Positions 5,761 through 63,528 of a stretch of 64,000 bases of DNA are shown here, in pieces. The stretch covers positions 1,116,001 through 1,180,000 of the forward strand of contig JANJGN010000071.1 in assembly GCA_026770705.1 (NCBI GenBank), read 5' to 3'. The translations under genes and the position numbers were made by a program. The DNA is from Isurus oxyrinchus (lineage: Eukaryota). A model generated the notes under the pieces. The model was not told the origin of the DNA. It searched no databases and was given only the letters and a program-made list of their open reading frames with translations. The first letter of the stretch is position 1, and the number at the start of each line of letters is the position of its first letter.

Positions 5761-5800
5761 ATGATCGGGAAATCCTACTTCCTCCTGTCACTGCTCCAAG
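5761..5800 (+). CDS. Gene B leader (signal peptide) exon
   Basis: MIGKSYFLLSLLQ with phase-1 donor CAAG|GTAATA; splices in frame to either V exon; same LLQ|G ending as the gene C leader. Confidence 0.75.
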
Positions 5801-10461: not shown

Positions 10462-11083
10462 GTGTTATCACTTGGCAGGTGATGTGTGCCAGGCAGACCA
10501 AGTCCTTGAGAGAAACCTGGTCACACTATCATAATGATTTTGCAATTTGTATTTATTATGAGATGTGTGCACTTAATTCAGAAGCAATAACTCCACCAAT
10601 ACCTTTAGAGATTTAAAACAATAAATTAACATATTTGTCATCAAAATAAAAGATTTCAAGCACATACATAACTACAATTACTGCTATCATAACTCCTAAA
10701 ATTCCTAATTAACCTGACTCCCAGTCACACTCCCTTTAAGGCAACAGACCAAAAATAAATGTTGGATTTAAAACAAAATCAGCAAGTTAACCCAATGCCC
10801 CGGACAGTGGAATTCCAAATGCATTGTCCCCAACTTCAGTTCTGTTGGAGAACAGGCTTCTGTACAAACAGGGTCCTGAGGACCATGAACCAATGTAGAA
10901 TGAACTTTTCCGCTTTTGTGTCCAGGATTCTCTTCCATCTGGTGTGATACCTTGTGGAGTTCATTGTGTGTCCTATAGATGGTCCACACTGCAGCCACTG
11001 TGCCCGAGTGATGGAGGAGGTGGATATCGAGTCTAGTGGATCAACAAAACATCCAGATTAAATATTGATATTTCTCTCCCCAG

Positions 11084-11461
11084 TTGGATTGTCACAAGAG
11101 TGGAAAGGTGACACTCCACGAGAGGTGACAGCGCAGGAAGGTTCGTGTGTACAGATTCCATGTCATTACAGTTATCCATCAGATTTGGTAAAGAAACCAC
11201 AGGTCGGAATCTGGAAAATGAGAAGATACATACGGAACAAATGGTCTAAATGGTCTATAGCCTTTCACTCCAAGGGTCACAGTCGCGAGTTATCACAGTT
11301 CCACCATCGGACCCGGCTGTCTGGAGACCTGAAAGATGGCGACTGTTCCCTGATTATAAACAACATCAGATGGGAAGATGCAGGACCTTATTTTTTCACG
11401 ATAAAATTTGGCAATCGTCCGAGCCATAACTATTACCCTGAAACCCAGCTTCACGTTTCTG
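11084..11461 (+). CDS. Gene B V-set exon 1 (Siglec-type; essential Arg replaced by Thr)
   Basis: ccccag| acceptor and G|GTAAGT donor, phase 1/1, open frame; motifs GSCVQIPC and GDLKDGDCSLII; F strand YFFTIK (ACG at 11398). Confidence 0.85.
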
Positions 11462-11629
11462 GTAAGTGCTGTGTTATAATTACTCAACAATTCACATCCA
11501 ACACTCAATGGGAAATAATAGTGTTTGATTTGCTTGTTTTTTGGCCGTGTTAACCAGCGTCACTATTTTTAATGATTTGCCTATTTCTGCTCCCAGATCC
11601 ATGAGCTTATTGTGTCTGATTGAATCCAC

Positions 11630-12700
11630 ATCATAGCTGTAACGTAAACCGAGCTGAGGGGTGATGACACCTCCCACCTGAGTGAAGTATCTCCTCCTCA
11701 CTACACCTTCCACCCCTCACACTGCCTGTGTAATCTCCCGTCCCATCTCCAGCCTCTCTTTCCCCTCCAAAGTCCTTGAACGTGTTTCCATCTCCCGAAT
11801 CCGTTCCCATCTTTCCCGGAACTCCATGTTTGAATCCCTCCAATCAGGTTCCCACCCCAGCCACTGTGCTGAAACAGCTCTTATCAAGGTCACAAATGGC
11901 ATCCTGTGTGACTGTGACAAAGGTCAACTTTCCCTCCTCGTCCTTCTCGATCTGTCTGCAGCCTTTGACACGCTCGACCACACCATCCTCCTCCAACACC
12001 TCTCCACTGTCGTCCAGCTGGGTGGGACTGCTCTCCCCTGGCTCCATTCTTATCCATCTCATCGTAGCCAGAGAATCACTTGCAATGGCTTTGCAGCATC
12101 ATCTGAACAGTGTTAGTTTTCACCTGTCCACTGAGGATCCCCAGCTCTACCTCACCACCACCTCTCTCGACTCCTCCACTGCTGCTAAATTATCAGGCTG
12201 CTTATCCGACATCCAGTACTGGATGGGCAGAAATTCCCTCCAATTAAATATTGGAAAGACTGAAGCCATTGTCTTCATTCCCCACTCCAAACTCTGTTCC
12301 CTCGCTACCAACTCCATTCCTCTCCCTGGCAGCTCTCTGAGATTGAAGCCAATCTGTTCACAGCTTTGTTGTCCCATTTGATCCTGAGATGACCTTCCGG
12401 CCTCAATTTTGCGCCCTCACTAACACCGAGTATTTCCACCTCCGTAACATCGCATGACATCACCCTGTCTCAGCTCATCTGCTGCTGAAACCCTCATCCA
12501 CGCCTTCATTACCTCCAGACTCGACTGTTCCAACACACGCTCTACACTCCATAAACTTGAGGCCATCCAAAACTGCTGACCACGTCCTTACTCACACCAA
12601 GTCCCGTTCCCTTATCATCCGCTCTGCTCGATGACCGAGACTGGCCCCTGGTCAAGCAAAGTCTCAATGTCCAAATTTTTGAATATTTTTCCTCCCTATT
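11630..12700 (+). mobile_element. L2-type LINE reverse transcriptase fragment
   Basis: HCAETALIKV, LLVLLDLSAAFDTLDH, DPQLY and LQLNIGKTE motifs across frameshifted ORFs. Confidence 0.85.
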
Positions 12701-12739
12701 ACAGTAATCTCCTCCTTTATTTTCATCCACGGCAACATT

Positions 12740-13690
12740 CCCTATCTCAGGAGCCTCCTCCAGTCCCTACAACCCTCTCTATCTCAGGAGCCTCCTCCAG
12801 TCCCTACAACCCTCCCTATCTCAGGAGCCTCCTCCAGTCCCTACAACCCTCCCTATCTCAGGAGACTCCTCCAGTCCCTACAACCCTCCTATCTCAGTAC
12901 CCTCTTCCAATCCCGAAAACCATTCCTATCACTGCAAACTCCTCTGGACCCAACACCCCTCCCTATCTCTTTAACCTCCTCAAGCCCCGATAACCCTCGC
13001 GATATTTGTAGCCTCCTCCAGTCCTAACAACCTCCCCTATCTCTGCAACCTCCTCCAGACCGAATACCTCTCCCTATCTCTGTCAGCTGGTCCATCTCTT
13101 ACAACCCATCATATTTCTGTAACCTCCTCCAGCCCACTACAACCCTCCCTATCTCTGTAACCTCCTCCAGTCCCTAAGAGTTTCCTTTATCTCTGTAACC
13201 TCCTCCAGCCATTATAACCCTCCCTATCTCTGTAGCCTCCCTCAGCCCCAGCCACACTCCATATCTATGTAACCTCGTCCTGCCCCTACAAACCTCCCTA
13301 TTTCTGTAACCCCATCCTGCCCCAAAAACTCCCCCATCTCTGTAAACTCCTCCAGTCCCTGCAACCTTCCCTACCTCTGGAACCTCCACCAGCCTTTCCA
13401 ACCCTCCCTACCTCTGCAATCCGTCCAGCCCCTACAACTCTTCCTATCCCTGTAAACTCCTCCTGCCCCTAAAACCCTCTCTGCCCTTGCAGCCTCCTCC
13501 AGTCCCTACACGCTCCCCATCTCCATAAACTCCTCAAATCCCTATAGCCCTCCCTATCTCTGCAACCTCCTCCAGGTCCTACCACCCTCCCTATCTGCGT
13601 AACCTCCTCCAGTATCTACAGCCCTCCCTATCTCTGTAACCTCCTCCAGCCCCCACAAACCTCCCTATCTGTGTAACCTCCTCCAGCCCC
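12740..13690. repeat. 37-bp minisatellite (ccctacaaccctccctatctctgtaacctcctccagc)
   Basis: Degenerate tandem array directly after the L2 fragment. Confidence 0.9.
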
Positions 13691-13764
13691 TGATGGAAGG
13701 TGGGTCGAGCGGGTCAGTCACTTGCATGTTTATTCTGCAGCTTTAATATTTTAAGATGGTAAGA

Positions 13765-14535
13765 ATGTAGGAACATAAGAAATAGGGACAGGAGCAGGCC
13801 ATTCGGCCCCTCCAGCCTGCTCTACTGATCTGGTTGTGGCCTTAACTCCATTTTCCTGCCTGTTCCCCAAACCCTTGACTCCCTTGTCGATCAAAAACCT
13901 GCCTCACTCAGCCTTGAGTCTATTCAATGGCCCAGACTCCACTGCTCTCTGGGGAAGAGAATTCCACAGGCTAGCGCCCCTCTGAGAGAGGAAATTCCTC
14001 CTCATCTCAGTCTTGAATGGGAGAGCCCTCATTCCGAAACTGTGCTCCCTGGTTCTAGATTCCCCCACGAGGGGGAAACATCCTCCCAGCATCCACCCTG
14101 TCAAGCCCCCTCGGAATCAGATATGTTTCAATAAGGTCACCCCTCATTCTTCTAAACTCCAATGGATACAGGCCCAACCTGCTCAACATTTCCTCACAGG
14201 ACAAACCCTTTAATCCCAGGAATCAGCCCAGTGAAGCTTCTCTGTACTGCCTTCAATGCAACTCTATCCCTCCCTAAGTAAGGAGACCAGAACTGTACAC
14301 ACTGCTCCTGATACAATCTCACCCTGTGCAGCTGTTGCAAGTCTTCCCTCCTTTTATACTCCATCCCTTTGCAATAAAGGCCAACATTCCACTTGCCTTC
14401 CTCATTCCGTGGTGTTCCTGAATGCTGACTTTCTGTGATTCATGTACAAGGACACCCAGATCCCTCTGTACTGCATTCTGCAGCCTGTCTCCATTTAAAT
14501 AATATCCTGTTTTTCTATTCTTCCTGCCAAAATAA
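13765..14535 (-). mobile_element. CR1-type LINE 3' fragment
   Basis: RDLGVLVHES, KASGMLAFI, LWNSLPQRAVE on the minus strand. Confidence 0.8.
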
Positions 14536-14650
14536 TTTGTTGCCATTTTCCTCAGTATTGACCATCCCCCCAATTCAGCCTCATCTGTAAATTTGAGTCT
14601 AGTGGATCCACAAACCATCCAGAGTTAAATATTGATATTTCTCTCCCCAG

Positions 14651-15019
14651 CTGAACCCTCACAAGAGTGGAAAGGTGACACTCCACGAGAGGTGACAGCG
14701 CAGGAAGGTTCGTGTGTACAGATTCCATGTCATTACAGTTATCCATCGTGTCTGGAAAACCAAACGCGAGGTGGAGTCTGGTTTAATAATGAGGAACAGA
14801 TTCCCTGGGCTCCCATTGCCTTTCACTCCAAGGATCACAGTCACGAGTTACCACGGTTCCACCATCGGACCCGGCTGTCTGGAGACCTGAAAGATGGCGA
14901 CTGTTCCCTGATTATAAACAACATCAGACGGGAAGATGCAGGACCTTATTATTTCAGGATAGAATTTGGCAATGGTCCGAGCCATAACTATTACCCTGTA
15001 ACCCAGCTTCACGTTTCTG
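14651..15019 (+). CDS. Gene B V-set exon 2 (Siglec-type; essential Arg retained)
   Basis: Phase 1/1 splice sites; GSCVQIPCHYSYP...GDCSLIINNIRREDAGPYYFRIEF; Arg codon AGG at 14956-14958. Confidence 0.9.
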
Positions 15020-15832
15020 GTAAGTGCTGTGTTATAATTACTCAACAATTCACATCCAACACTCAATGGGAAATAACACAAACTGTGACGTTTACATATT
15101 AACACAAAACACAGCTTATTATAACACACTGTCTGATTCTCAATAACCTGCTAATAGCTTCCAGTTCAGTCCTAAAACAACCTCTAATACTCACTTTAAT
15201 ATCAATGATTAAATGTATTGACTGTGTCCATCAATGTTATCAGGTTATCCACTTACATCAATCTCCCTAATCCTGTTTAAAATTCTTACATATCAACAAA
15301 AGAAAGATTTGCATTTCTATAGCGCCTTTCACCACCTCTGGACGTCGCAAATGGATTCACAACCATTGAAATAATTCTTGAAATGTAGCCCTTGTTGTAA
15401 TATAGGAAACACAGCAGCCAATTTGTGCACAGGAAGCTCCCAGAAACAGCAATGTGATCAATAACCTGATCGTCTGCTTTAAATGCCTGTTCAGTGATTG
15501 GTTCAAATGGTTTCTCTCCTGGTGGCGACAGGATAGAATTTAAATCTGGCAGATTTCAGAGAAAGTAACAAGCCAGTGTGTCAGGAACTGTGAGCTGCTC
15601 CCCCGCCCTCACCTGGGATTGTCAATTCAATTGTCTCAAAGTGGAAGTGAATTCATCTGAGAGACAGAAAGTCCACTAAGTCTGAAAATAGGAAATTCTC
15701 TCCTGATCATTGTAACCTCTCAGATCTGATATCATCCTTGTAAAAGTGCTTTCTCTTGTGGGACTGTGATTTCTATTTGAACTGATGCTTCACGTTATAT
15801 TTCTCTAAAAGGATCCATTCCCTGTCTGTTAG

Positions 15833-16129
15833 ATTTCACAGATAAACCCACGATATTGCCTGCTGAAATTATTGCAGGAAAGCGTGTGGATGTAAGCTGC
15901 ACCTTCAACACAACGTGCAATGGAACAGCAGCACCTGTCTTAACCTGGGACACTCCCACTGACGTACCTGGATCAGTCTCAAACACTGTAACTCAGCATG
16001 GTGTCACTCTGACCTATACTTCTGTTCTGACCCTGATCCCATCACTCAAACACCACGGACACACTCTCAGCTGCAGAGTGAGATATCCATCTGTTTCATC
16101 GGAGCAGACCCTTATGCTAACTGTAAAAT
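15833..16129 (+). CDS. Gene B C2-set domain (Siglec domain-2 type)
   Basis: FTDKPTILPAEIIAGKRVDVSCTFNTTCNGTAAPVLTW...LSCRVRY; extra Cys typical of the Siglec V-C2 interdomain disulfide; ag/gt phase 1/1. Confidence 0.9.
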
Positions 16130-16489
16130 GTAAGTATGGATTCCCTTCATTCTATATTAGCTGTAATAGGATACAATGTGCAGAGCAAGATCCCACAAAC
16201 ATCACTTGAAGACAAAACATGTCCTTTTTTATTAGTGATATTGACCAGGGAGAGCTCTTCCTGTATTGAGCCTTGGGATTGTTTATGCCTACCTGATAGT
16301 GCAGAGGGGGCCAAGGTTGAACTTAAAAGACAATATAGGATAATATAAATATTGTCTTCATTGACGTCAAAGATTTTGGGGGAGATGTAGTATAAAAGTT
16401 TTATATTAACAATGTAAATAGATAGTATTTATCATCAGTTACTCAAGGTCACATGAGAATAGAACACGGAGAGAGATAGTTCTATAGAT

Positions 16490-20651: not shown

Positions 20652-20933
20652 ATGCTCCACAGAATCTCTCATTTACTTCTCTTGATATGATTAACGCTTC
20701 ATCGGTCAATATAATTGAGGGGAATTCTGCAGTGATAATCTGCTCTGTCGAGAGCTTCCCAGCTTCTAACCTGACGTGGCGACATCTTAATGTCCCAATG
20801 AACAGAACAAGTTCCAACAATGAGCTGTGGTTGGTGATTCCTCACGTTACATCCAGGGACACTGGAGACTATCTGTGTGTGGCAGAGAATGAACATGGAG
20901 CAGTGGAGGGGTTCATAACCATCACTGTGGAAC
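20652..20933 (+). CDS. Gene B Ig C2 exon (copy a of tandem pair)
   Basis: APQNLSF...CSVESFPASNLTW...DTGDYLCVAENEHG; 282 nt, phase 1/1. Confidence 0.9.
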
Positions 20934-21869
20934 GTGANNNNNNNNNNNNNNNNNNNNNNNNNNNNNNNNNNNNNNNNNNNNNNNNNNNNNNNNNNNNNNN
21001 NNNNNNNNNNNNNNNNNNNNNNNNNNNNNNNNNNNNNNNNNNNNNNNNNNNNNNNNNNNNNNNNNNNNNNNNNNNNNNNNNNNNNCCTGTCTCAGTGCTG
21101 CACTCGAGTCTCGGTAGCAGCTCTGATTCTGTGTTGAAGGAAGGTAAACTCCAGATCATCAAGACACTGAATTGGATGGAGCAACCTCCTGAACAGTGAA
21201 TTGTAGGTTTATCACCCAATACCCCATTATTCCAAAGCAATTCCTCCATGGTGAAATCTCCGTGAACATCCTGATCATGTGAAAGACACTTTCTTTTCTT
21301 CTAGCCTGACAGTGTCTCCTCTGGTGGAAGGCTGTAATTACAGCGTGACAGTTTACATATCCACACGCAGCAAGAGCTGAATAACACTCAGCTTGGGCTG
21401 AGAAATGACAAGTAATGTTCACACCACACAAGCACCAGGCAGTGATCATCTCCAACAAGAGAGAATCTAACCATCTCTCCTTGATATTCAATGACTTTCC
21501 CATCGCTGAATCCCCCACAATCCACATCCTGGGGGATGTTACCCAAACAACTAACTGGACCGGCCATAAATACTGTGGCTACAGGAGCCGGTCAGAGGCT
21601 GGGAATCCTCTGGAGGTGAAAAACTCACCACCACCTCCTCAAGGGCAATTAGGGATGGGTAATAAATGCTGGTCTAGATAGATACATCCACTTCCCATGA
21701 ATATGCAAAAAGGAACACACTGGCAGTGAATGTTACAAATGGTGACAGAGAAAATTATAATGGGGAAAGAAGCCTTGACATGCACATAGACACCAGATGG
21801 AGAGAGATGATACCTGGAGTCTTGCTGTGCACTGTGTTTGCTCACAATGAAACCTTTATTTGTATTTAG

Positions 21870-22151
21870 ATGCACCACGGAACCCATCAATTACTTCTCT
21901 TGATATGATTAACGCTTCATCGATCAATATAATTGAGGGGAATTCTGCAGTGATAATCTGCTCTGTCGAGAGCTTCCCAGCTTCTAACCTGACGTGGCGA
22001 CATCTTAATGTCCCAATGAACAGAACAAGTTCCAACAATGAGCTGTGGTTGGTGATTCCTCACGTTACATCCAGGGACACTGGAGACTATCAGTGTGTGG
22101 CAGAGAATGAACATGGAGCAGTGGAGGGGTTCATAACCATCACTGTGGAAT
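21870..22151 (+). CDS. Gene B Ig C2 exon (copy b of tandem pair)
   Basis: APRNPSI...DTGDYQCVAENEHG; 282 nt, phase 1/1; near-identical to 20652-20933. Confidence 0.9.
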
Positions 22152-22199
22152 GTGAGTGTGGAGATACATTTGTTTGTTTGTTGTCTCCGTGGTCTCCGT

Positions 22200-22480
22200 G
22201 GAGCCATTGGGATCGTGTTGTTTTTAATCCAGTTTTCTTCAATCCTCGCTCAGTCCACGTTATCCACACACCCAATTTTTCCTCTCCCTTTCTGTTTTTG
22301 CTCTCAGTTTCTCCTTCAATGGTTGTGAGGACAAGGCTGTCAGGTCTTCGTTTCCAATCTCCGTACTTGATGAACTTTCTCTCTCTAACTGTCCTGAACA
22401 ACCCTTTTAATTGCTGAACGTCTCCTCTTGATCTAAGCCACTCATTGGTCTTTCTGTCCATCCAGCTGATTCTGAGCATC
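22200..22480 (-). mobile_element. RTE-like LINE 3' fragment
   Basis: MLRISWMDRKTNEWL motif on the minus strand. Confidence 0.55.
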
Positions 22481-23700
22481 TGGCAGCATCTGTGGAGAGA
22501 AAGACAGGGTTAGCGTTTGGAGTCCGTAAGACTCCTCTTCAGAGCTAAAGGGAAGTAGACATGTGGTGAAATATATCCTGTCTAAGGGGGGGCGATGGGA
22601 CAGGTGGAGCTGGATAGAAAACCAGCGATAGGTGGAGGCAATGGAGAGATTGTGGAAGATGTCATAAACAAAAGGTCAAAGGGTTGTTAACAGTGGTGGT
22701 ATTGGATAAAGGAGGTGCTAATGGTGACATTAAGCAGAGTGTGATAATGGGCGGACCAGGGTAAGCACTCTGGAAAGAGACAGATGGCCCTCGTGGGGGT
22801 GTGGCAGGGGGAGGGGACAGTGGAGGGAATAAAGATCAAAAATAGACTAAAATCTGTGGATAAAACAATCAATAAAAATGGAAATGAATTTCAAGTAATA
22901 ATAACAAAAATAAGTGGAAAAAAATTAACAAATAAAACAATTAAAATGTATATATTAAAAAATCGGGTCAAAAAGCAGTGAAGATCGAGGAGAGAGTTCA
23001 TGATCTGAAATTGTTGAACTCAATATTCAGTCGGGAAGGCTGTAAAGTGCCAGGTCGGAAGATGAGGTGTTGTTCCTCCAGTTTGTGTTGGGCTTCACTG
23101 GAACAATGCAGCAGGCCAAGGACGGACATGTGGGCATGAGAGCAGGGTGGGGTGTTAAAATGGCAAGCGACAGGGAGGTCTGGGTCGTTCTTGCAGACAG
23201 ACTGAAGGTATTCTGAAAAGTGGTCACCCAGTCTGTGTTTGGTGTCTCCAATGTAGAGGAAACCGCACTGGGAGCAGTGAATGCAGTAGATTAAATTGAA
23301 GGAAGTCTGCATGAAGCGCTGCTTCACCTGGAAGGAGTGTTTGGGTCATTGGACAGTGAGGGGGGAGGAAGTAAAGGGGCAGGTGTTGCACCTTCTGTAA
23401 ATACATGGGAAGATGTCATCGGAGAGGGTTGAGGTGCTAGGGGTGATGGAGGAGTGGACCAGGATGACCTCGAGGGAATGATCCCTATGGAATGCCAACA
23501 TGGGGGAGGTGGGGGGGGGCGGATGTGGTGAAGGGAAGATGTGTTTGGTGGTGGCATCATGCTGGAGTTGGCGGAAATGGCGGAGAATGATCCTTTGAAT
23601 GAGGAGGCTGGTGGGGTGAAAAGTGAAGACAGGAGGGACCCTTACATTGCTCTGGGAGGGAGAGGAATTTGCAAGGGGGGATGCACGGGAGATACACAAT
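22480..23700 (-). mobile_element. Penelope-like element fragment (GIY-YIG endonuclease)
   Basis: NLIYCIHCSQCGFLYIGDTKHRL...PVACHFN; degenerate hammerhead-like core (rc CTGAAGA-GGAGTC...GACTCC-AAAC) near 22515-22542. Confidence 0.8.
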
Positions 23701-24021
23701 CTCCAACTCTTTCTCAACCATTAAGATGCTCCTTAAAACCATTAAGACACACCGTTAAAACCTCCTGCTTTCAGCGAGCTTTTGCTCACCTCTCCTAATA
23801 TCTCCTAATGTGACTCGGGGTCAGATTTTGTCCGAAGGAGGTGAGAAATGATGGAGGGAATTCCAGAGGTTAGGGTCCAGGCAGCTTAAGGCACGGCCGC
23901 CAATGGTGGAGAGATGGGAATGGGAGAATGTGCAAGGGGTCGGAATTGGAGGAGCACAGAGATTTCGGAGAGCTGTGGGGTGTGGGGATTATCTGCTGAT
24001 TGTTCTCTGTCTTTGTTCCAG

Positions 24022-24297
24022 ATCCCCCACAGGAGACGATGGTGTCCATCAGCAGATCCTCAGGTGGGATAAGAGAGGGAAGCAATATCACATTAACCTG
24101 CTCCAGTGAAAGTGTCCCACCGATATCTCATTACACCTGGTTCAGGATCGAGGGGAACACCAGCACCCAGTTAAATACAAGTAGCCGCACTCTCTCCTTC
24201 ACTCCTGTAACACGGGAGAATGATGCAGGTTTCTACTGCACAGCGAGGAACCCAATGGGTAACAGCACCTCCAACATCACACACCTGAACGTACAAT
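24022..24297 (+). CDS. Gene B Ig C2 exon
   Basis: PPQETMVSI...EGSNITLTCSSESVPPISHYTWF...DAGFYCTARNPMG; phase 1/1. Confidence 0.9.
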
Positions 24298-24649
24298 GTA
24301 AGCATTTTACTCCCCCTGTCTCTGCTTAAAACTCAAACACTTTCTGTCTGAGGGCAGCTTCCTTGCTGTTGTTTAGCATAACTAGCATCACCTCCCTGCT
24401 TTTTTCACCCTGCGCCTCTCCGAGATACATAAGGAGATATTAGAACAGGGACTGAAAGCTCAGAGAAAGAGGCCAGATTTTAAGGAGTGTCTGAAATGAG
24501 GAGAGAGATAGACATGGAGAGGTTTACGGTGGGAATTCTAGTACTCGGGGCCCAGGCAGCTGAAGGCACGGCCGCCAATGGTGGAGCGATAGGAATCGGG
24601 GGATGGTCAAGAGGCCGGAATTGGAGGAACGCAGAGACCTCGGAGGGAT

Positions 24650-25020
24650 GTAGATGCTGGAGGAGGTTACAGAGATAGGGAGGGTTGTGGGGTCTGGAGG
24701 AGGTTACAGAGATAGGGAGGGTTGTGATGGCTGGAGGAGGTAACAGAGATAGGGAGGGTTATAGGGGCTGGAGGAGGTAACAGAGATAGGGAGGGTTGTG
24801 ATGGCTGGAGGAGGTAACAGAGATAGGGAGGGTTATAGGGGCTGGAGGAGGTAACAGAGATAGGGAGGGTTGTAGATGCTGGAGGAGGTAACAGAGATAG
24901 GGAGGGTTGTGGGGTCTGGAGGAGGTTACAGAGATAGGGAGGGTTGAAGGGGCTGGAGGAGGTTACAGAGATAGGGAGGGTTGTAGATGCTGGAGGAGGT
25001 AACAGAGATAGGGAGGGAGT
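24650..25020. repeat. 37-bp minisatellite inside an L2-like fragment (reverse orientation)
   Basis: Tandem gctggaggaggttacagagatagggagggttgtaggg units. Confidence 0.9.
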
Positions 25021-60675: not shown

Positions 60676-60815
60676 TTAAACAGTCTGTCGACTTCCTTTC
60701 ACTGTTTGTCTCTCCCAGACACAGACTCCAGCGATAGTGATAACCACAGCCACAAGGAATATCACAGCTCGTATTCCCAGGATCAGGATCACGTGCAGAA
60801 TCTCTCCTCCACTGT
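60676..60815 (-). pseudogene. Gene D terminal TM-Arg exon (exon intact, gene disabled upstream)
   Basis: SGGEILHVILILGIRAVIFLVAVVITIAGVCVWERQTVKGSRQTV*; acceptor ttgtctag|. Confidence 0.75.
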
Positions 60816-62478
60816 CTAGACAACACACAGAAAGAAATCATCACTGACTCTCCGCTTTCAATCTCTCACTCTGGCTGAACAATCAAGCTTCATATCACTG
60901 CAACATTTGCTGTAATATTGACCCATCCACTGGGATTCAATGTGGAATGAATGTTTTCATTGTAAACACTCTAAGAGTGGACAATCGGAACTTTCCCCTT
61001 AGCGTGGAACATTGGTGAGAATGGATCATTGTGCTGTTGGACTCCCTGTCCAATGTTTCTCTCCATCGCTGTGTACAGGATTGTGCTGTAGAAAATTCTG
61101 GAAACGTTTAGTGCAGGGTGGAAATCCATCTCGGACGTGTGTGCGAATCGGGCAGGATCGAGATGGACTCCCCCACGGACATACACCCCCCGCTTAATAA
61201 ACAGTTCCAATCTTTACCCAGAGAGAGGGGAGAATGTGGAACTCGCTCCCACAGGGAGTGTGTGATGTGAACACTATCGATGTATTTAAGGGGCGGGAGG
61301 GTCGGTAACCAGAGGGACACAGATTGACGAACCGGAGGGGGAGATGAGGAGAATTTGTTTTGACAGAGCGAGTTGTTGTGATCTGGAAGGTGCTGCCTGA
61401 AAGGGCGGTGGAAGCAGATTCAATAGGAACTTTCAAAAGGGAAATTGGATAAACACTTGAAGGAAGAAGAAGGGGGCAAAGTGGTGTGGTGGTTAGTGGA
61501 TCTGATTGGATAGAACATTGAAAGACCTGGCACAGGCACAATGGGCTGAATGGCCTCCTCCTGTGCTGTATCATTCTCCGTTTCCATGATCTCTCCCCCA
61601 GTCAGTAACCACTCCAGATCCCTCTTGAAGGTGACAGAGAGACAGCAACCACCACACCCACTGACAGCACATTCCCGAGGATCCCTACTCTCTGGGAAAA
61701 GATGAAGTCCCCAACATCCAGCCTAATCCTGCTTCCCGGAGAGTGTAAACACTTCAGGGAGGCGTTGAGGAAGTTTTCAATAAAATGAATTATCAAATCT
61801 ACCGTTTGAGAAATAATTGAATTCCGATGAACTCCCAGCTTGTGTAGCAAACTGGGAAGTAGATTTGCTTGAAAAGCTGGGAAACACAAGGATTAAGTGC
61901 TACAATGCCACCACTGGTGGGAGGCTGTAACTACAGTGTGACGTTTACATAGGCAGTCATCACTATAAACAGGGGCTTTGGACATAATGGGCACGGAAAT
62001 AGTGAGAACAGGATGTAAGCTTTTCATCAGCAGGAATTCTCTTACTAAACCTCTCCACCTCTCTCTTACTCTCAGATTCACAAAAAATTCACAGAATCAG
62101 ATAAAGAGGAGTTGGGACTAGTTATTCGTCAACGGGTTAGGATTCAGGTAGCTCCTTGAAGGGAGAGAGAGAGTTGGAGAAGCAGAGAGTATCTATGAGT
62201 GCCTCTATGCATCTGAGTGTTTGTATGAGTAATTTCCATATTCTTCTATAAATATGAATGGGAACACAAATCCCAGAATTCAGCCCACGCTCCAGTGTAG
62301 TACTGAGGGAGGTCAGGTAACCCATGAGGGAGTCTTGTGCTAGTGTGTTTGTTTGTGAGTGTGTCTTTGTGTGTGGTCATATATGTGTGTCTGCACGTGT
62401 CTATTTAGGTCTGTACGTTTGAGGGTGTTTGTGTAGTATTCGAATCTGAGAGAGATGTTGATGTCTGTGTACACTCAC

Positions 62479-63154: not shown

Positions 63155-63528
63155 CAGAAACGTGAAGCTGGGTTACAGGATAGTAGCTGTAACTATTCCT
63201 GCTGTCAAACTCTATTCTGAAAAAATAAGGTCCTGCATCTTCCCGTCTGATGTTGTTTATAATCAGGGAACAGTCGCCATCTTTCAGGTCTCCAGACAGC
63301 CGGGTACGATGGCGGAATCTTTGATCCCTGTGATTGTGACCCTCGGAGTGAAAGGCTATAGACCATTTAGGCTGTGGGTTCCCATCTATTCCTTTCAACC
63401 AGATTCTGCACGTGATCTCCCTACGAAATTTGATAAGTAACTGTAATGACATGGAATCTGTACACATGAACCTTCCTGTGCTGTCACCTCTCATGGAGTG
63501 TCACCTTTCCACTCTTGTGACAGTCCAA
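63155..63528 (-). pseudogene. Gene D Siglec-type V-set exon with nonsense and frameshift mutations
   Basis: CGA>TGA at 63491-63493; 1-nt deletion before the C-strand Trp; retains YFFRIEF and both splice sites. Confidence 0.85.

What the first reader, a model, noticed from the sequence alone, without database searches (positions are those of the whole stretch)
11084..15019. One leader, two V-set exons: with and without the sialic-acid-binding arginine
Both exons are open with intact phase-1 splice sites, and I see no leader between them. V1 has YFFTIK (Arg>Thr); V2 has YYFRIE. Compared with single-V gene D, V1 keeps the original upstream intron and V2 the original downstream intron. This indicates an internal duplication of ~0.5 kb. 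Canonical Siglecs have one V domain (Siglec-12 has two). Outcomes could be alternative ligand-binding heads or a V-V tandem.
Basis: partly seen in the sequence, partly recalled or inferred. Interest (0 to 1): 0.8.

Follow-up and report, generated by a model that had tools for sequence, protein, structure and literature searches.

The report
Shark Siglec gene with two V-exons
A shark immune-receptor gene of the sialic-acid-lectin (Siglec) type carries two intact copies of its sugar-binding exon, and the outer copy has lost the arginine that normally grips sialic acid; the layout is real but belongs to an old, already auto-annotated shark and ray family, and I could not show that the outer exon is used.

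Summary
Exons 11084-11461 (V1, ...YFFTIKF) and 14651-15019 (V2, ...YYFRIEF) are both open, phase 1-1, with identical splice signals. They lie in a ~490-bp repeat unit split by 3.2 kb of transposon DNA and a minisatellite. No second leader lies between them.

The interpretation needs revision.
- Gene D's V exon is broken (stop plus frameshift) and reads as a V1/V2 hybrid, so it is a poor ancestor.
- V1's centre, with a 4-residue insert, matches the first V of two-V proteins of Carcharodon and Cetorhinus. V2's centre and extra cysteine match their second V. The pair is therefore probably old, and its edges look homogenised.
- RefSeq models with 2-6 V domains exist in many sharks and rays.
- Earlier notes of this scan report the same outer-V-without-Arg pattern elsewhere in this genome.

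Most likely the gene makes an ITIM-type receptor with a V1-V2 head: V2 is the lectin and V1 cannot bind sialic acid the canonical way. This is the reverse polarity of chimpanzee Siglec-12.

I obtained no RNA evidence for V1. No indexed run holds its unique part, and the contigs laid showed only V2-type-to-C2 joints from paralogs. Alternative heads, or a silent V1, remain open.

The parts
5761..5800 (+). Leader exon (coding part): ATG, MIGKSYFLLSLLQ plus 1 base, then a GT donor. It is the only leader copy in the window.
   Evidence: Read. The same leader begins the homologous proteins P0002, P0158 and P0165. No second copy was found.
11029..11518 (+). Repeat unit copy 1: 55 nt of intron, the V1 exon, then 57 nt of intron.
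   Evidence: blastn gives 88.7% over 495 columns against 14595-15076; alignment A1.
11084..11461 (+). V1 exon, a V-set domain of 378 nt in phase 1-1. It has a V1-type centre (VGIWKMRRYIRNKWSKWSIAFHS). Thr (ACG, 11398-11400) stands at the essential-Arg site.
   Evidence: It groups with the first V of lamniform two-V proteins (SH-aLRT 93).
11462..14650 (+). Intron of 3.19 kb between V1 and V2. It holds a reverse-transcriptase fragment (11682-12113), a 37-bp minisatellite (12739-13691, 25.8 copies) and other repeats. It has no leader-like exon.
   Evidence: RVT_1 E 9.8e-09; TRF; very high contig depth, typical of repeats.
14595..15076 (+). Repeat unit copy 2.
14651..15019 (+). V2 exon, a V-set domain of 369 nt in phase 1-1. 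It begins (A)EPSQEWKG, carries the extra Cys in YPSCLENQ, and keeps the essential Arg (AGG) in YYFRIEF.
   Evidence: Its Arg aligns with the FR motif of Siglec-5 (GSYFFRVE) and MAG (GKYYFRGD) in solved structures. It is 94-96% identical to the second V of P0173.
15833..16129 (+). First C2-set exon (297 nt, phase 1-1), DFTDKPTILPAE...VSCTFNTTC...
   Evidence: Pfam C2-set_2 E 1.3e-09. A V2-type-to-C2 joint at 15018/15832 is seen in contigs of runs X6 and X10.
20652..25626 (+). Four further Ig exons of the same gene: about 20652-20933, 21870-22151, 24022-24297 and about 25327-25626.
   Evidence: I corrected the exon ends by 1 nt so that they meet GT donors.
26505..31680 (+). TM exon (about 26505-26603) and two duplicated cytoplasmic cassettes. 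These end in FLYANP...TEYAQI (to 28721) and LLYANI...TEYAQI (to 31680), which are ITIM/ITSM-like motifs.
   Evidence: tblastn with P0158 and P0169; translation and motif scan.
63155..63528 (-). V exon of neighbouring gene D. It is broken (TGA at codon 12 plus a frameshift, 374 nt). Its 5' part and centre are V1-like; its 3' part and downstream intron are V2-like.

Best explanation
The region is the head of one inhibitory-type (ITIM/ITSM-like tail) Siglec-like receptor gene of a lamniform shark. Its exon order is leader, V1, V2, C2, four Ig exons, TM and tail.

V1 and V2 are not a private new duplicate. They are the two members of an older outer-V/inner-V pair found in many paralogs and in other sharks. 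Their edges and flanking intron look homogenised, probably by gene conversion (inferred), while the C-C' centre stays type-specific.

Both exons have identical splice signals, are symmetrical (phase 1-1) and have lengths divisible by 3. The default mRNA should therefore include both and give a V1-V2-C2 head (inferred, not shown).

V2 keeps the essential arginine and is the likely sialic-acid lectin domain. V1, the membrane-distal domain, has Thr at that site through a single AGG>ACG change. It therefore cannot make the canonical salt bridge with the sialic-acid carboxylate (established Siglec knowledge). V1 would act as a non-lectin cap or spacer, or as a domain with another ligand.
For: Shown here:
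- Both exons are open with the same acceptor and donor and are V-set/Ig_CD22 domains.
- There is one leader and no other leader-like exon.
- The downstream C2, Ig, TM and ITIM-like exons are collinear with homologous proteins.
- V2's Arg aligns with the FR motif of solved Siglec-5 and MAG structures.

Family context:
- A phmmer search with V1 found 894 proteins at E<=1e-3. The 7 best of the 150 listed have 2-4 V stretches.
- These are RefSeq models from Scyliorhinus, Cetorhinus, Mustelus, Hypanus and Chiloscyllium.
- Of the 280 proteins fetched up to then, plus the two window exons scored alongside, 18 rows had two V domains, 6 three, 4 four and 1 six.

Outer and inner types:
- winV1 falls in a 7-row group with first-V domains of Carcharodon and Cetorhinus proteins (SH-aLRT 93), and winV2 falls among second-V domains.
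- The 4-residue insert is present in 4 of 4 V1-type sequences that cover it and absent in 9 of 9 V2-type sequences.
- A Cys at V2's YPSC site occurs in 36 of 47 non-first V domains against 2 of 166 first or single ones. Both exceptions are N-terminally truncated models.

Sign that V1 is translated:
- In the 3' 61 codons plus 57 nt of intron, V1 and V2 differ at 9 nonsynonymous and 0 silent positions (Fisher p 0.008). Neutral decay does not predict this.

Leads only, not tested here: earlier notes of this scan report the same outer-V-without-Arg layout (s1-869923) and V-to-V splicing in RNA (s1-871168) elsewhere in this genome.
Against: - I have no RNA evidence for V1 of this gene. No run held more than 0.38 of V1's sampled words, and 0.29 of V1's 31-mers are already shared inside the window.
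- In the two probable RNA runs laid (X6, X10), depth is 0 over 11262-11442. No V1-to-V2 or V1-to-C2 joint was among the 15 joints shown; 1672 more were not shown.
- The contigs that do show splicing are V2-type-to-C2 (X6 record 27) and a single-V leader-V-C2 transcript of a paralog (X10 record 2).
- A word search with V1 found 3 proteins, none carrying V1's sequence.
- The AU tests do not reject V1 and V2 as sisters: whole domain p 0.41, centre p 0.14, flanks p 0.31.
- The Cys-position link is not significant once relatedness is allowed for: 4 supported independent pairs, median p 1.
- V1 differs from all 16 lamniform relatives compared at Gly65, Ser71 and Thr106, and broken gene D shares the Gly codon. 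It also has a long end branch, 0.20 against 0.044 for V2. Both would also fit relaxed constraint.
- Several related gene models start inside a V1-type exon (P0156, P0171, P0173), and one skips all V exons (P0194).
- RefSeq multi-V models are automatic predictions.
Confidence: 0.55

Rival explanations
1. Alternative heads. Regulated skipping gives leader-V1-C2 and leader-V2-C2 isoforms, one receptor without and one with the sialic-acid-binding arginine. All skip products stay in frame.
For: Both exons are symmetrical (phase 1-1) with lengths of 378 and 369 nt, so either or both can be skipped in frame. The junction codons read G+TT, G+CT and G+AT. Related models include a leader-to-C2 form with no V (P0194). 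A single-V transcript of a paralog was seen (X10 record 2).
Against: Nothing enforces exclusivity. The splice sites are identical GT-AG sites, the intron is 3.2 kb, and double inclusion keeps the frame. A V domain with V2's extra Cys follows a leader directly in none of the intact models: the only 2 first or single domains with it, of 166, are N-terminally truncated models. No junction data for this gene could be obtained.
Confidence: 0.2
2. V1 is an unused or decaying exon copy. It is still open by chance or youth, and the gene in effect makes a single-V (V2) receptor. The Arg>Thr change is drift.
For: No run or protein in the collections holds V1's unique part. The probable RNA contigs leave 11262-11442 uncovered while V2 and C2 are covered by near-identical contigs. 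V1 has substitutions at positions invariant in 16 relatives (G65, S71, T106) and a long branch. Neighbouring D has a broken V1-like exon, and three related models start inside V1-type exons.
Against: V1 has no stop or frameshift, and its splice signals are identical to V2's. All Ig-core residues are kept: the two Cys of the C..IPC motif, DCSL, the Trp, and DAGPY. The 3' block shows 9 nonsynonymous against 0 silent differences from V2 (p 0.008), which is the opposite of neutral decay. Contigs show presence, not absence, and the contigs that cover V2 differ from the window by about 1-2%, so they may come from paralogs rather than this gene.
Confidence: 0.2
3. A recent ~0.5-kb internal tandem duplication, private to this gene, arose from a single-V ancestor like gene D and was followed by transposon insertion between the copies.
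For: The homology boundaries are exactly as described, and D carries V1's upstream and V2's downstream intron. The flanks of V1 and V2 are nearly identical: 0 differences in 57 nt downstream. The AU tests do not reject V1 and V2 as sisters.
Against: The centres differ strongly (dS 0.72, with a 4-codon indel). Each centre matches a different domain class that is also present in Cetorhinus maximus and Carcharodon carcharias proteins, in the same outer/inner order. D switches from V1-like to V2-like near 11277-11285, as expected for an unequal-crossover product. D itself is broken.
Confidence: 0.15

Closest known systems
Primate Siglec-12 / human Siglec-XII
   Same: It is a CD33-related-type inhibitory Siglec with two N-terminal V-set domains, of which only one has a working arginine in chimpanzee. 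The human protein has lost sialic-acid binding through an Arg mutation yet still signals (passages of PMC7876704, and PMC6288428).
   Different: The polarity is reversed. In chimpanzee Siglec-12 the terminal (outer) V binds through its Arg, and the critical Arg of the second V is mutated in human (PMC7876704 passage). Here the outer V1 lacks the Arg and the inner V2 keeps it. The two arose independently, since the shark V1/V2 types group with elasmobranch domains. The mutation here is Arg>Thr, not Arg>Cys.
RefSeq multi-V Siglec models of sharks and rays, for example Cetorhinus maximus 'sialic acid-binding Ig-like lectin 12 isoform X3' (XP_078389734, P0002) and Carcharodon carcharias 'lectin 10, partial' (P0165)
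   Same: They share the leader (MIGKSYFLLSLLQ), the V1-type then V2-type order, the same C2 exon and ITIM-type tails. P0002 is 73% identical to V1 over both of its V stretches, and V2 is 94-96% identical to the second V of P0173.
   Different: In the 7 lamniform V1-type domains compared, the Arg site is R in 6 and K in 1, and never T. These are automatic models. I found no paper describing them.
Arg-mutated CD33-related Siglecs of great apes (Siglec-5/-14)
   Same: The essential arginine is lost in an otherwise intact V-set domain of a signalling-competent receptor (PMC6288428 passages).
   Different: Those are single-V receptors that lose all binding. Here a second V domain with an intact Arg remains in the same gene.
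Batoid four-V Siglec models (Hypanus sabinus P0003/P0155, Mobula hypostoma P0162)
   Same: They have several V-set domains in a row with a mixed state at the Arg site.
   Different: There the first V keeps R and the later ones carry K, S/R and K. That is the opposite polarity to this gene.

Membership tests
Siglec (I-type sialic-acid lectin) family | N-terminal V-set Ig domain of the Siglec type | tested here: met
   Pfam V-set and Ig_CD22 hit both exons. The 17 best PDB sequence hits are all Siglecs: Siglec-5, MAG, Siglec-7, -8, CD33, -10 and sialoadhesin, at E 5.7e-15 to 1e-11.
Siglec (I-type sialic-acid lectin) family | Essential arginine on the F strand (the ..Y.FR.. motif) | tested here: met
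   This row is for V2. YYFRIE aligns with YFFRVE of Siglec-5 and YYFRGD of MAG. That this Arg is MAG R118 is recalled knowledge, combined with the alignment offset.
Siglec (I-type sialic-acid lectin) family | Essential arginine on the F strand (the ..Y.FR.. motif) | tested here: not met
   This row is for V1. Thr (ACG) stands in the homologous column. Among 223 V domains of relatives the column is R in 194 and T in 1 (Leucoraja P0248).
Siglec (I-type sialic-acid lectin) family | Siglec cysteine pattern: B- and E-strand Cys plus a further Cys that links to the next domain | tested here: met
   The Cys of the C..IPC motif and of DCSL are present in V1 and V2. The C2 exon has VSCTFNTTC. The disulfide partners themselves are inferred from Siglec structures by recall; no coordinates were available.
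Siglec (I-type sialic-acid lectin) family | C2-set domains, a TM segment and a tyrosine-motif tail after the V domain | tested here: met
   C2-set_2 E 1.3e-09. The exons are collinear with P0158 and P0013. LLYANI and TEYAQI motifs are present.
Siglec (I-type sialic-acid lectin) family | Binding of sialylated glycans | not testable with these tools
   This needs recombinant V1, V2 and V1-V2 proteins on glycan arrays.
Two-V (Siglec-12-like / elasmobranch multi-V) Siglecs | Two or more V-set exons between one leader and the first C2 exon, all in frame | tested here: met
Two-V (Siglec-12-like / elasmobranch multi-V) Siglecs | Both V exons present in one mRNA or protein | tested here: inconclusive
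   No run holds V1's unique part. The contigs laid show only V2-type-to-C2 joints and a one-V paralog transcript. Related two-V proteins are automatic models.

The most novel reading that the evidence does not exclude
Shark and ray Siglec-like receptors have an old two-module head: an outer V1-type domain and an inner V2-type domain. The inner domain carries an extra cysteine that tethers it to the outer one. The inner domain is the sialic-acid lectin, while the outer domain is free to lose the arginine, as it has here and, by earlier notes, in other genes of this genome, and to take on another ligand or a gating role. Gene conversion keeps silent sites alike while selection keeps the amino-acid differences.
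Probability: 0.25. Interest if true: 0.6.

Novelty: new member of a known kind. Interest (0 to 1): 0.4.

Why it matters
Textbook Siglecs have one lectin domain, and primate Siglec-12 is treated as the single exception (PMC7876704 passage). This gene adds a clear case to an elasmobranch-wide family with stacked V domains. I found that family only in automatic annotation, not in any paper.

The polarity here is reversed relative to Siglec-12: the outer domain lacks the arginine and the inner one keeps it. If both domains reach one protein, the gene offers a natural experiment on how a lectin receptor works with a non-binding cap. It would also show how gene conversion and selection shape paired binding domains.

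In itself it is one more member of a pattern that this scan has already met elsewhere in the same genome.

Tried and rejected
- RNA support for V1. The look-up of sequencing runs with the V1 exon gave no holder above 0.38 of the sampled words, close to the 0.29 that V1 shares with other parts of the window. Read laying (4 of the 23 listed runs, X19, X20, X6 and X10, min_likeness 90) returned mostly transposon matches. X19 and X20 behave like DNA, with depth in all 30 bins. X6 and X10 showed V2-type-to-C2 joints from sequences 1-2.5% different from the window, and nothing on V1's unique 3' part.
No DNA of orthologous loci could be compared, so no dN/dS against orthologs and no dating of the R>T change was possible.
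- Short protein fragments carrying V1. The search returned 3 hits, none with V1's sequence.
- Phylogenetic proof that V1 and V2 are old. The topology agrees, but the AU tests are not significant.
- The link between the extra Cys and domain position. The raw counts are strong, but the independent-pairs test is underpowered (4 pairs, median p 1), so I do not claim an inter-V disulfide as shown.
- A structure prediction was considered and dropped, because the tool returns no coordinates and Cys-Cys distances could not be read.
- Rejected readings. An assembly artefact is unlikely: the copies differ by 11%, and each centre matches a different known class. A separate leader or promoter between the exons was also rejected.
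- Literature. Six searches found no paper on shark or ray Siglecs with several V domains. In one search only 15 of 325 listed papers were seen, by title and abstract. Subscription journals are not covered, and supplements were closed. Supplementary files 8-9 of the whale-shark paper PMC8455134 might list such genes.
Full report
OBSERVATION.

The two exons are as described. V1 (11084-11461, 378 nt) and V2 (14651-15019, 369 nt) are each open only in the frame that starts at the third base. Both are preceded by the same 20 nt ending in CCCCAG and followed by the same GTAAGTGCTGTG. Both translations hit Pfam V-set (E 2.8e-12 and 7.2e-12) and Ig_CD22. V1 reads DAGPYFFTIKFGN and V2 reads DAGPYYFRIEFGN; the codons are ACG and AGG.

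In the PDB sequence search, V2's FR motif aligns with YFFRVE of Siglec-5 and YYFRGD of MAG. That this is the essential arginine, MAG R118, is recalled knowledge and is consistent with the alignment offset.

The leader (ATG at 5761, MIGKSYFLLSLLQ plus one base, GT donor after 5800) is the only copy in the window. No leader-like mini-exon lies between V1 and V2: 0 candidates.

THE REPEAT.

The unit is 11029-11518 against 14595-15076, 88.7% identical over 495 columns. The minus-strand copy D continues V1's upstream intron and V2's downstream intron.

The 3.19 kb between the copies holds a reverse-transcriptase fragment (RVT_1, E 9.8e-09), a 37-bp minisatellite of 25.8 copies and other repeats.

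Divergence between V1 and V2 is a mosaic.
- The first 30 codons are nearly identical.
- Codons 31-65 are very different (dS 0.72) and include a 4-codon indel.
- The last 61 codons differ at 9 nonsynonymous and 0 synonymous positions, and the 57 nt of intron after the donor are identical.
- Counting 97.7 silent against 142.3 nonsynonymous sites in that last block, Fisher p is 0.008.

GENE D.

D's V exon is not an intact single V. It has CGA>TGA at codon 12 and a frame change. By my reading the exon is 63528..63155, 374 nt.

At the 51 sites where V1 and V2 differ inside the unit, D follows V1 up to about 11276. From 11285 on it follows V2 at 7 of 9 sites (V1 at 1, neither at 1). This fits a V1/V2 unequal-crossover product at least as well as an ancestral state.

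THE GENE.

tblastn with related proteins, and direct reading, place the following after V2:
- a C2-set exon (15833-16129; C2-set_2 E 1.3e-09);
- four further Ig exons;
- a TM exon;
- two duplicated cytoplasmic cassettes ending in FLYANP...TEYAQI and LLYANI...TEYAQI.

It is therefore an inhibitory-type Siglec-like receptor gene.

RELATIVES.

phmmer with V1 against the representative library gave 894 proteins at E<=1e-3. The 7 best of the 150 listed have 2-4 V stretches. They are RefSeq models named sialic acid-binding Ig-like lectin 8, 12 or 13 from Scyliorhinus canicula and S. torazame, Cetorhinus maximus, Mustelus asterias and Hypanus sabinus, plus a Chiloscyllium protein.

Two word searches (114 and 117 proteins) added Carcharodon carcharias, Rhincodon, Hemiscyllium, Mobula and others. 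With an HMM of V1 and V2, the 280 proteins fetched up to then, plus the two window exons scored alongside, gave 18 rows with two V domains, 6 with three, 4 with four and 1 with six.

The nearest named proteins are from Carcharodon carcharias and Cetorhinus maximus, so the window is from a lamniform shark.

OUTER AND INNER TYPES.

In a tree of 80 V domains, winV1 sits in a 7-row group (SH-aLRT 93) with the first V of the two-V proteins P0158, P0002/P0161 (Cetorhinus), P0165 (Carcharodon) and P0171, and with the single V of P0170. winV2 sits among second V domains.

The V1-type centre (VGIW.MRR...W..WS.AFHS) has a 4-residue insert in 4 of 4 sequences that cover it. The V2-type centre (SCLENQPRGGVWFNNEKQIPWAPIAFHS) lacks the insert in 9 of 9. 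Split trees show the mosaic: V1's centre is nearest to V1-type domains and its flanks are nearest to V2-type domains.

Against this, AU tests do not reject V1 and V2 as sisters: p 0.41 for the whole domain, 0.14 for the centre and 0.31 for the flanks. The old age of the pair therefore rests on the shared insert and motifs and on the topology, not on a significant test.

THE ARGININE SITE AND THE EXTRA CYSTEINE.

Across 223 V domains of relatives the Arg column is R in 194. By position this is 126 of 140 single, 29 of 32 first, 14 of 19 middle and 25 of 32 last. T occurs once, in Leucoraja erinacea P0248.

Among the 7 lamniform V1-type domains compared the column is R in 6 and K in 1, so Thr is private to this exon in that set. 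V1 also differs at two further positions invariant in the 16 lamniform relatives compared, G65 and S71. G65 is shared with D at the DNA level.

Batoid four-V models keep R in the first V and carry K, S/R and K in the later ones, which is the opposite polarity.

V2's Cys in YPSC occurs in 36 of 47 non-first V domains against 2 of 166 first or single ones. The two exceptions, P0197 and P0152, are N-terminally truncated models. Allowing for relatedness, only 4 supported independent pairs exist and the sign test is uninformative. An inter-V disulfide is therefore a hypothesis.

RNA.

No indexed run holds more than 0.38 of V1's sampled 31-mers, and 0.29 of V1's 31-mers recur elsewhere in the window. 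I laid the contigs of 4 of the 23 listed runs on 10900-16300 at 90% likeness.
- X19 and X20 cover all 30 bins, introns included, and look like DNA.
- X6 and X10 (RNA by guess) have depth 0 over 11262-11442.
- X6 record 27 joins 15018 to 15832, with 4 differences in 320 nt.
- X6 record 26 covers V2's centre with 5 differences in 252 nt.
- X10 record 2 (972 nt) is a leader, single V, C2 transcript. It has 12, 4 and 7 differences in its three pieces, so it comes from a paralog.
- No V1-to-V2 or V1-to-C2 joint is among the 15 joints shown. 1672 more, mostly transposon noise, were not shown.

A word search with V1 found 3 proteins of 139-178 aa, none with V1's sequence. The use of V1 is thus untested rather than refuted, because contigs show presence only.

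READING.

Most likely (0.55) this gene makes a V1-V2-C2 head. The arguments are:
- identical splice signals;
- symmetry of both exons;
- the family-wide outer/inner order;
- V2's position-linked cysteine;
- the excess of nonsynonymous over silent differences, which argues that V1 is seen by selection.

V2 would bind sialic acid. V1 cannot do so in the canonical way.

Rivals are regulated alternative heads (0.2), a silent or decaying V1 (0.2) and, for the history, a recent private duplication from a D-like ancestor (0.15).

KNOWN THINGS.

Primate Siglec-12 is the closest described case. [quoted passage not shown] Chimpanzee Siglec-12 binds through the terminal V, and the human protein is mutated at the critical arginines (passages of PMC7876704; PMC6288428). 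Here the polarity is reversed.

I found no paper on multi-V Siglecs of cartilaginous fish. In the whale-shark genome paper I saw only passages that mention Siglecs once. Supplements were closed.

Earlier notes of this scan report the same layout on other DNA of this genome:
- two or three V exons with the outer one lacking Arg (s1-869923);
- six and seven V exons (s1-871168, s1-865389), with V-to-V splicing claimed from RNA for one of them.

I did not test those claims and use them as leads only.

VERDICT.

The function is inferred. It is a new member of a kind already recorded by automatic annotation and by this scan. Interest is 0.4.

Noticed in passing
window 63155-63528 (-), with 60679-60816 (-): Gene D's V exon is broken (TGA at codon 12 and a frameshift) and reads as a V1/V2 hybrid. 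The same gene has an exon 96% identical to the arginine-bearing TM tail of P0173, so D looks like a dying activating-type partner.
   Followed up: partly
window 20652-20933 and 21870-22151: Two nearly identical Ig exons lie 1.2 kb apart. The first ends 4 nt before an N run (20938-21085). This could be a real tandem duplicate or an assembly problem. I did not look into the N runs.
   Followed up: no
window 14758-14766 (V2): V2 reads ENQTRGG where all 9 V2-type relatives read ENQPRGG. This creates an N-Q-T glycosylation sequon in the C-C' region that is private to this exon. Contigs of X19, X20 and X6 carry C at 14764, the P version.
   Followed up: partly
V domains of fetched proteins; window 14746-14748: A cysteine at the YPSC site is almost confined to V domains that follow another V (36 of 47 against 2 of 166). 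It lies a few residues after the IPC cysteine, much as the linking cysteine of the C2 exon (VSCTFNTTC) follows its B-strand Cys. It may be an inter-V disulfide. The test that allows for relatedness was underpowered.
   Followed up: partly
window 12739-13691: A 37-bp minisatellite (25.8 copies, 73% matches) lies in the V1-V2 intron, next to a reverse-transcriptase fragment (11682-12113). Contig depth is extremely high in all four runs, so the repeat families are abundant.
   Followed up: partly
protein P0194: A related gene model splices the leader directly to the C2 exon, with no V domain at all. If real, V-less isoforms exist in this family.
   Followed up: no
window 43329-43574 (+): A further V-set exon on the plus strand, only about 30% identical to V1 and V2, belongs to a different Ig gene between this cluster and the hepcidin copy noted earlier.
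   Followed up: no
window 27289-28721 and 29844-31680: The cytoplasmic cassette is duplicated. Only the second copy has a canonical LxYxxI motif (LLYANI); the first reads FLYANP. Both keep TEYAQI.
   Followed up: partly
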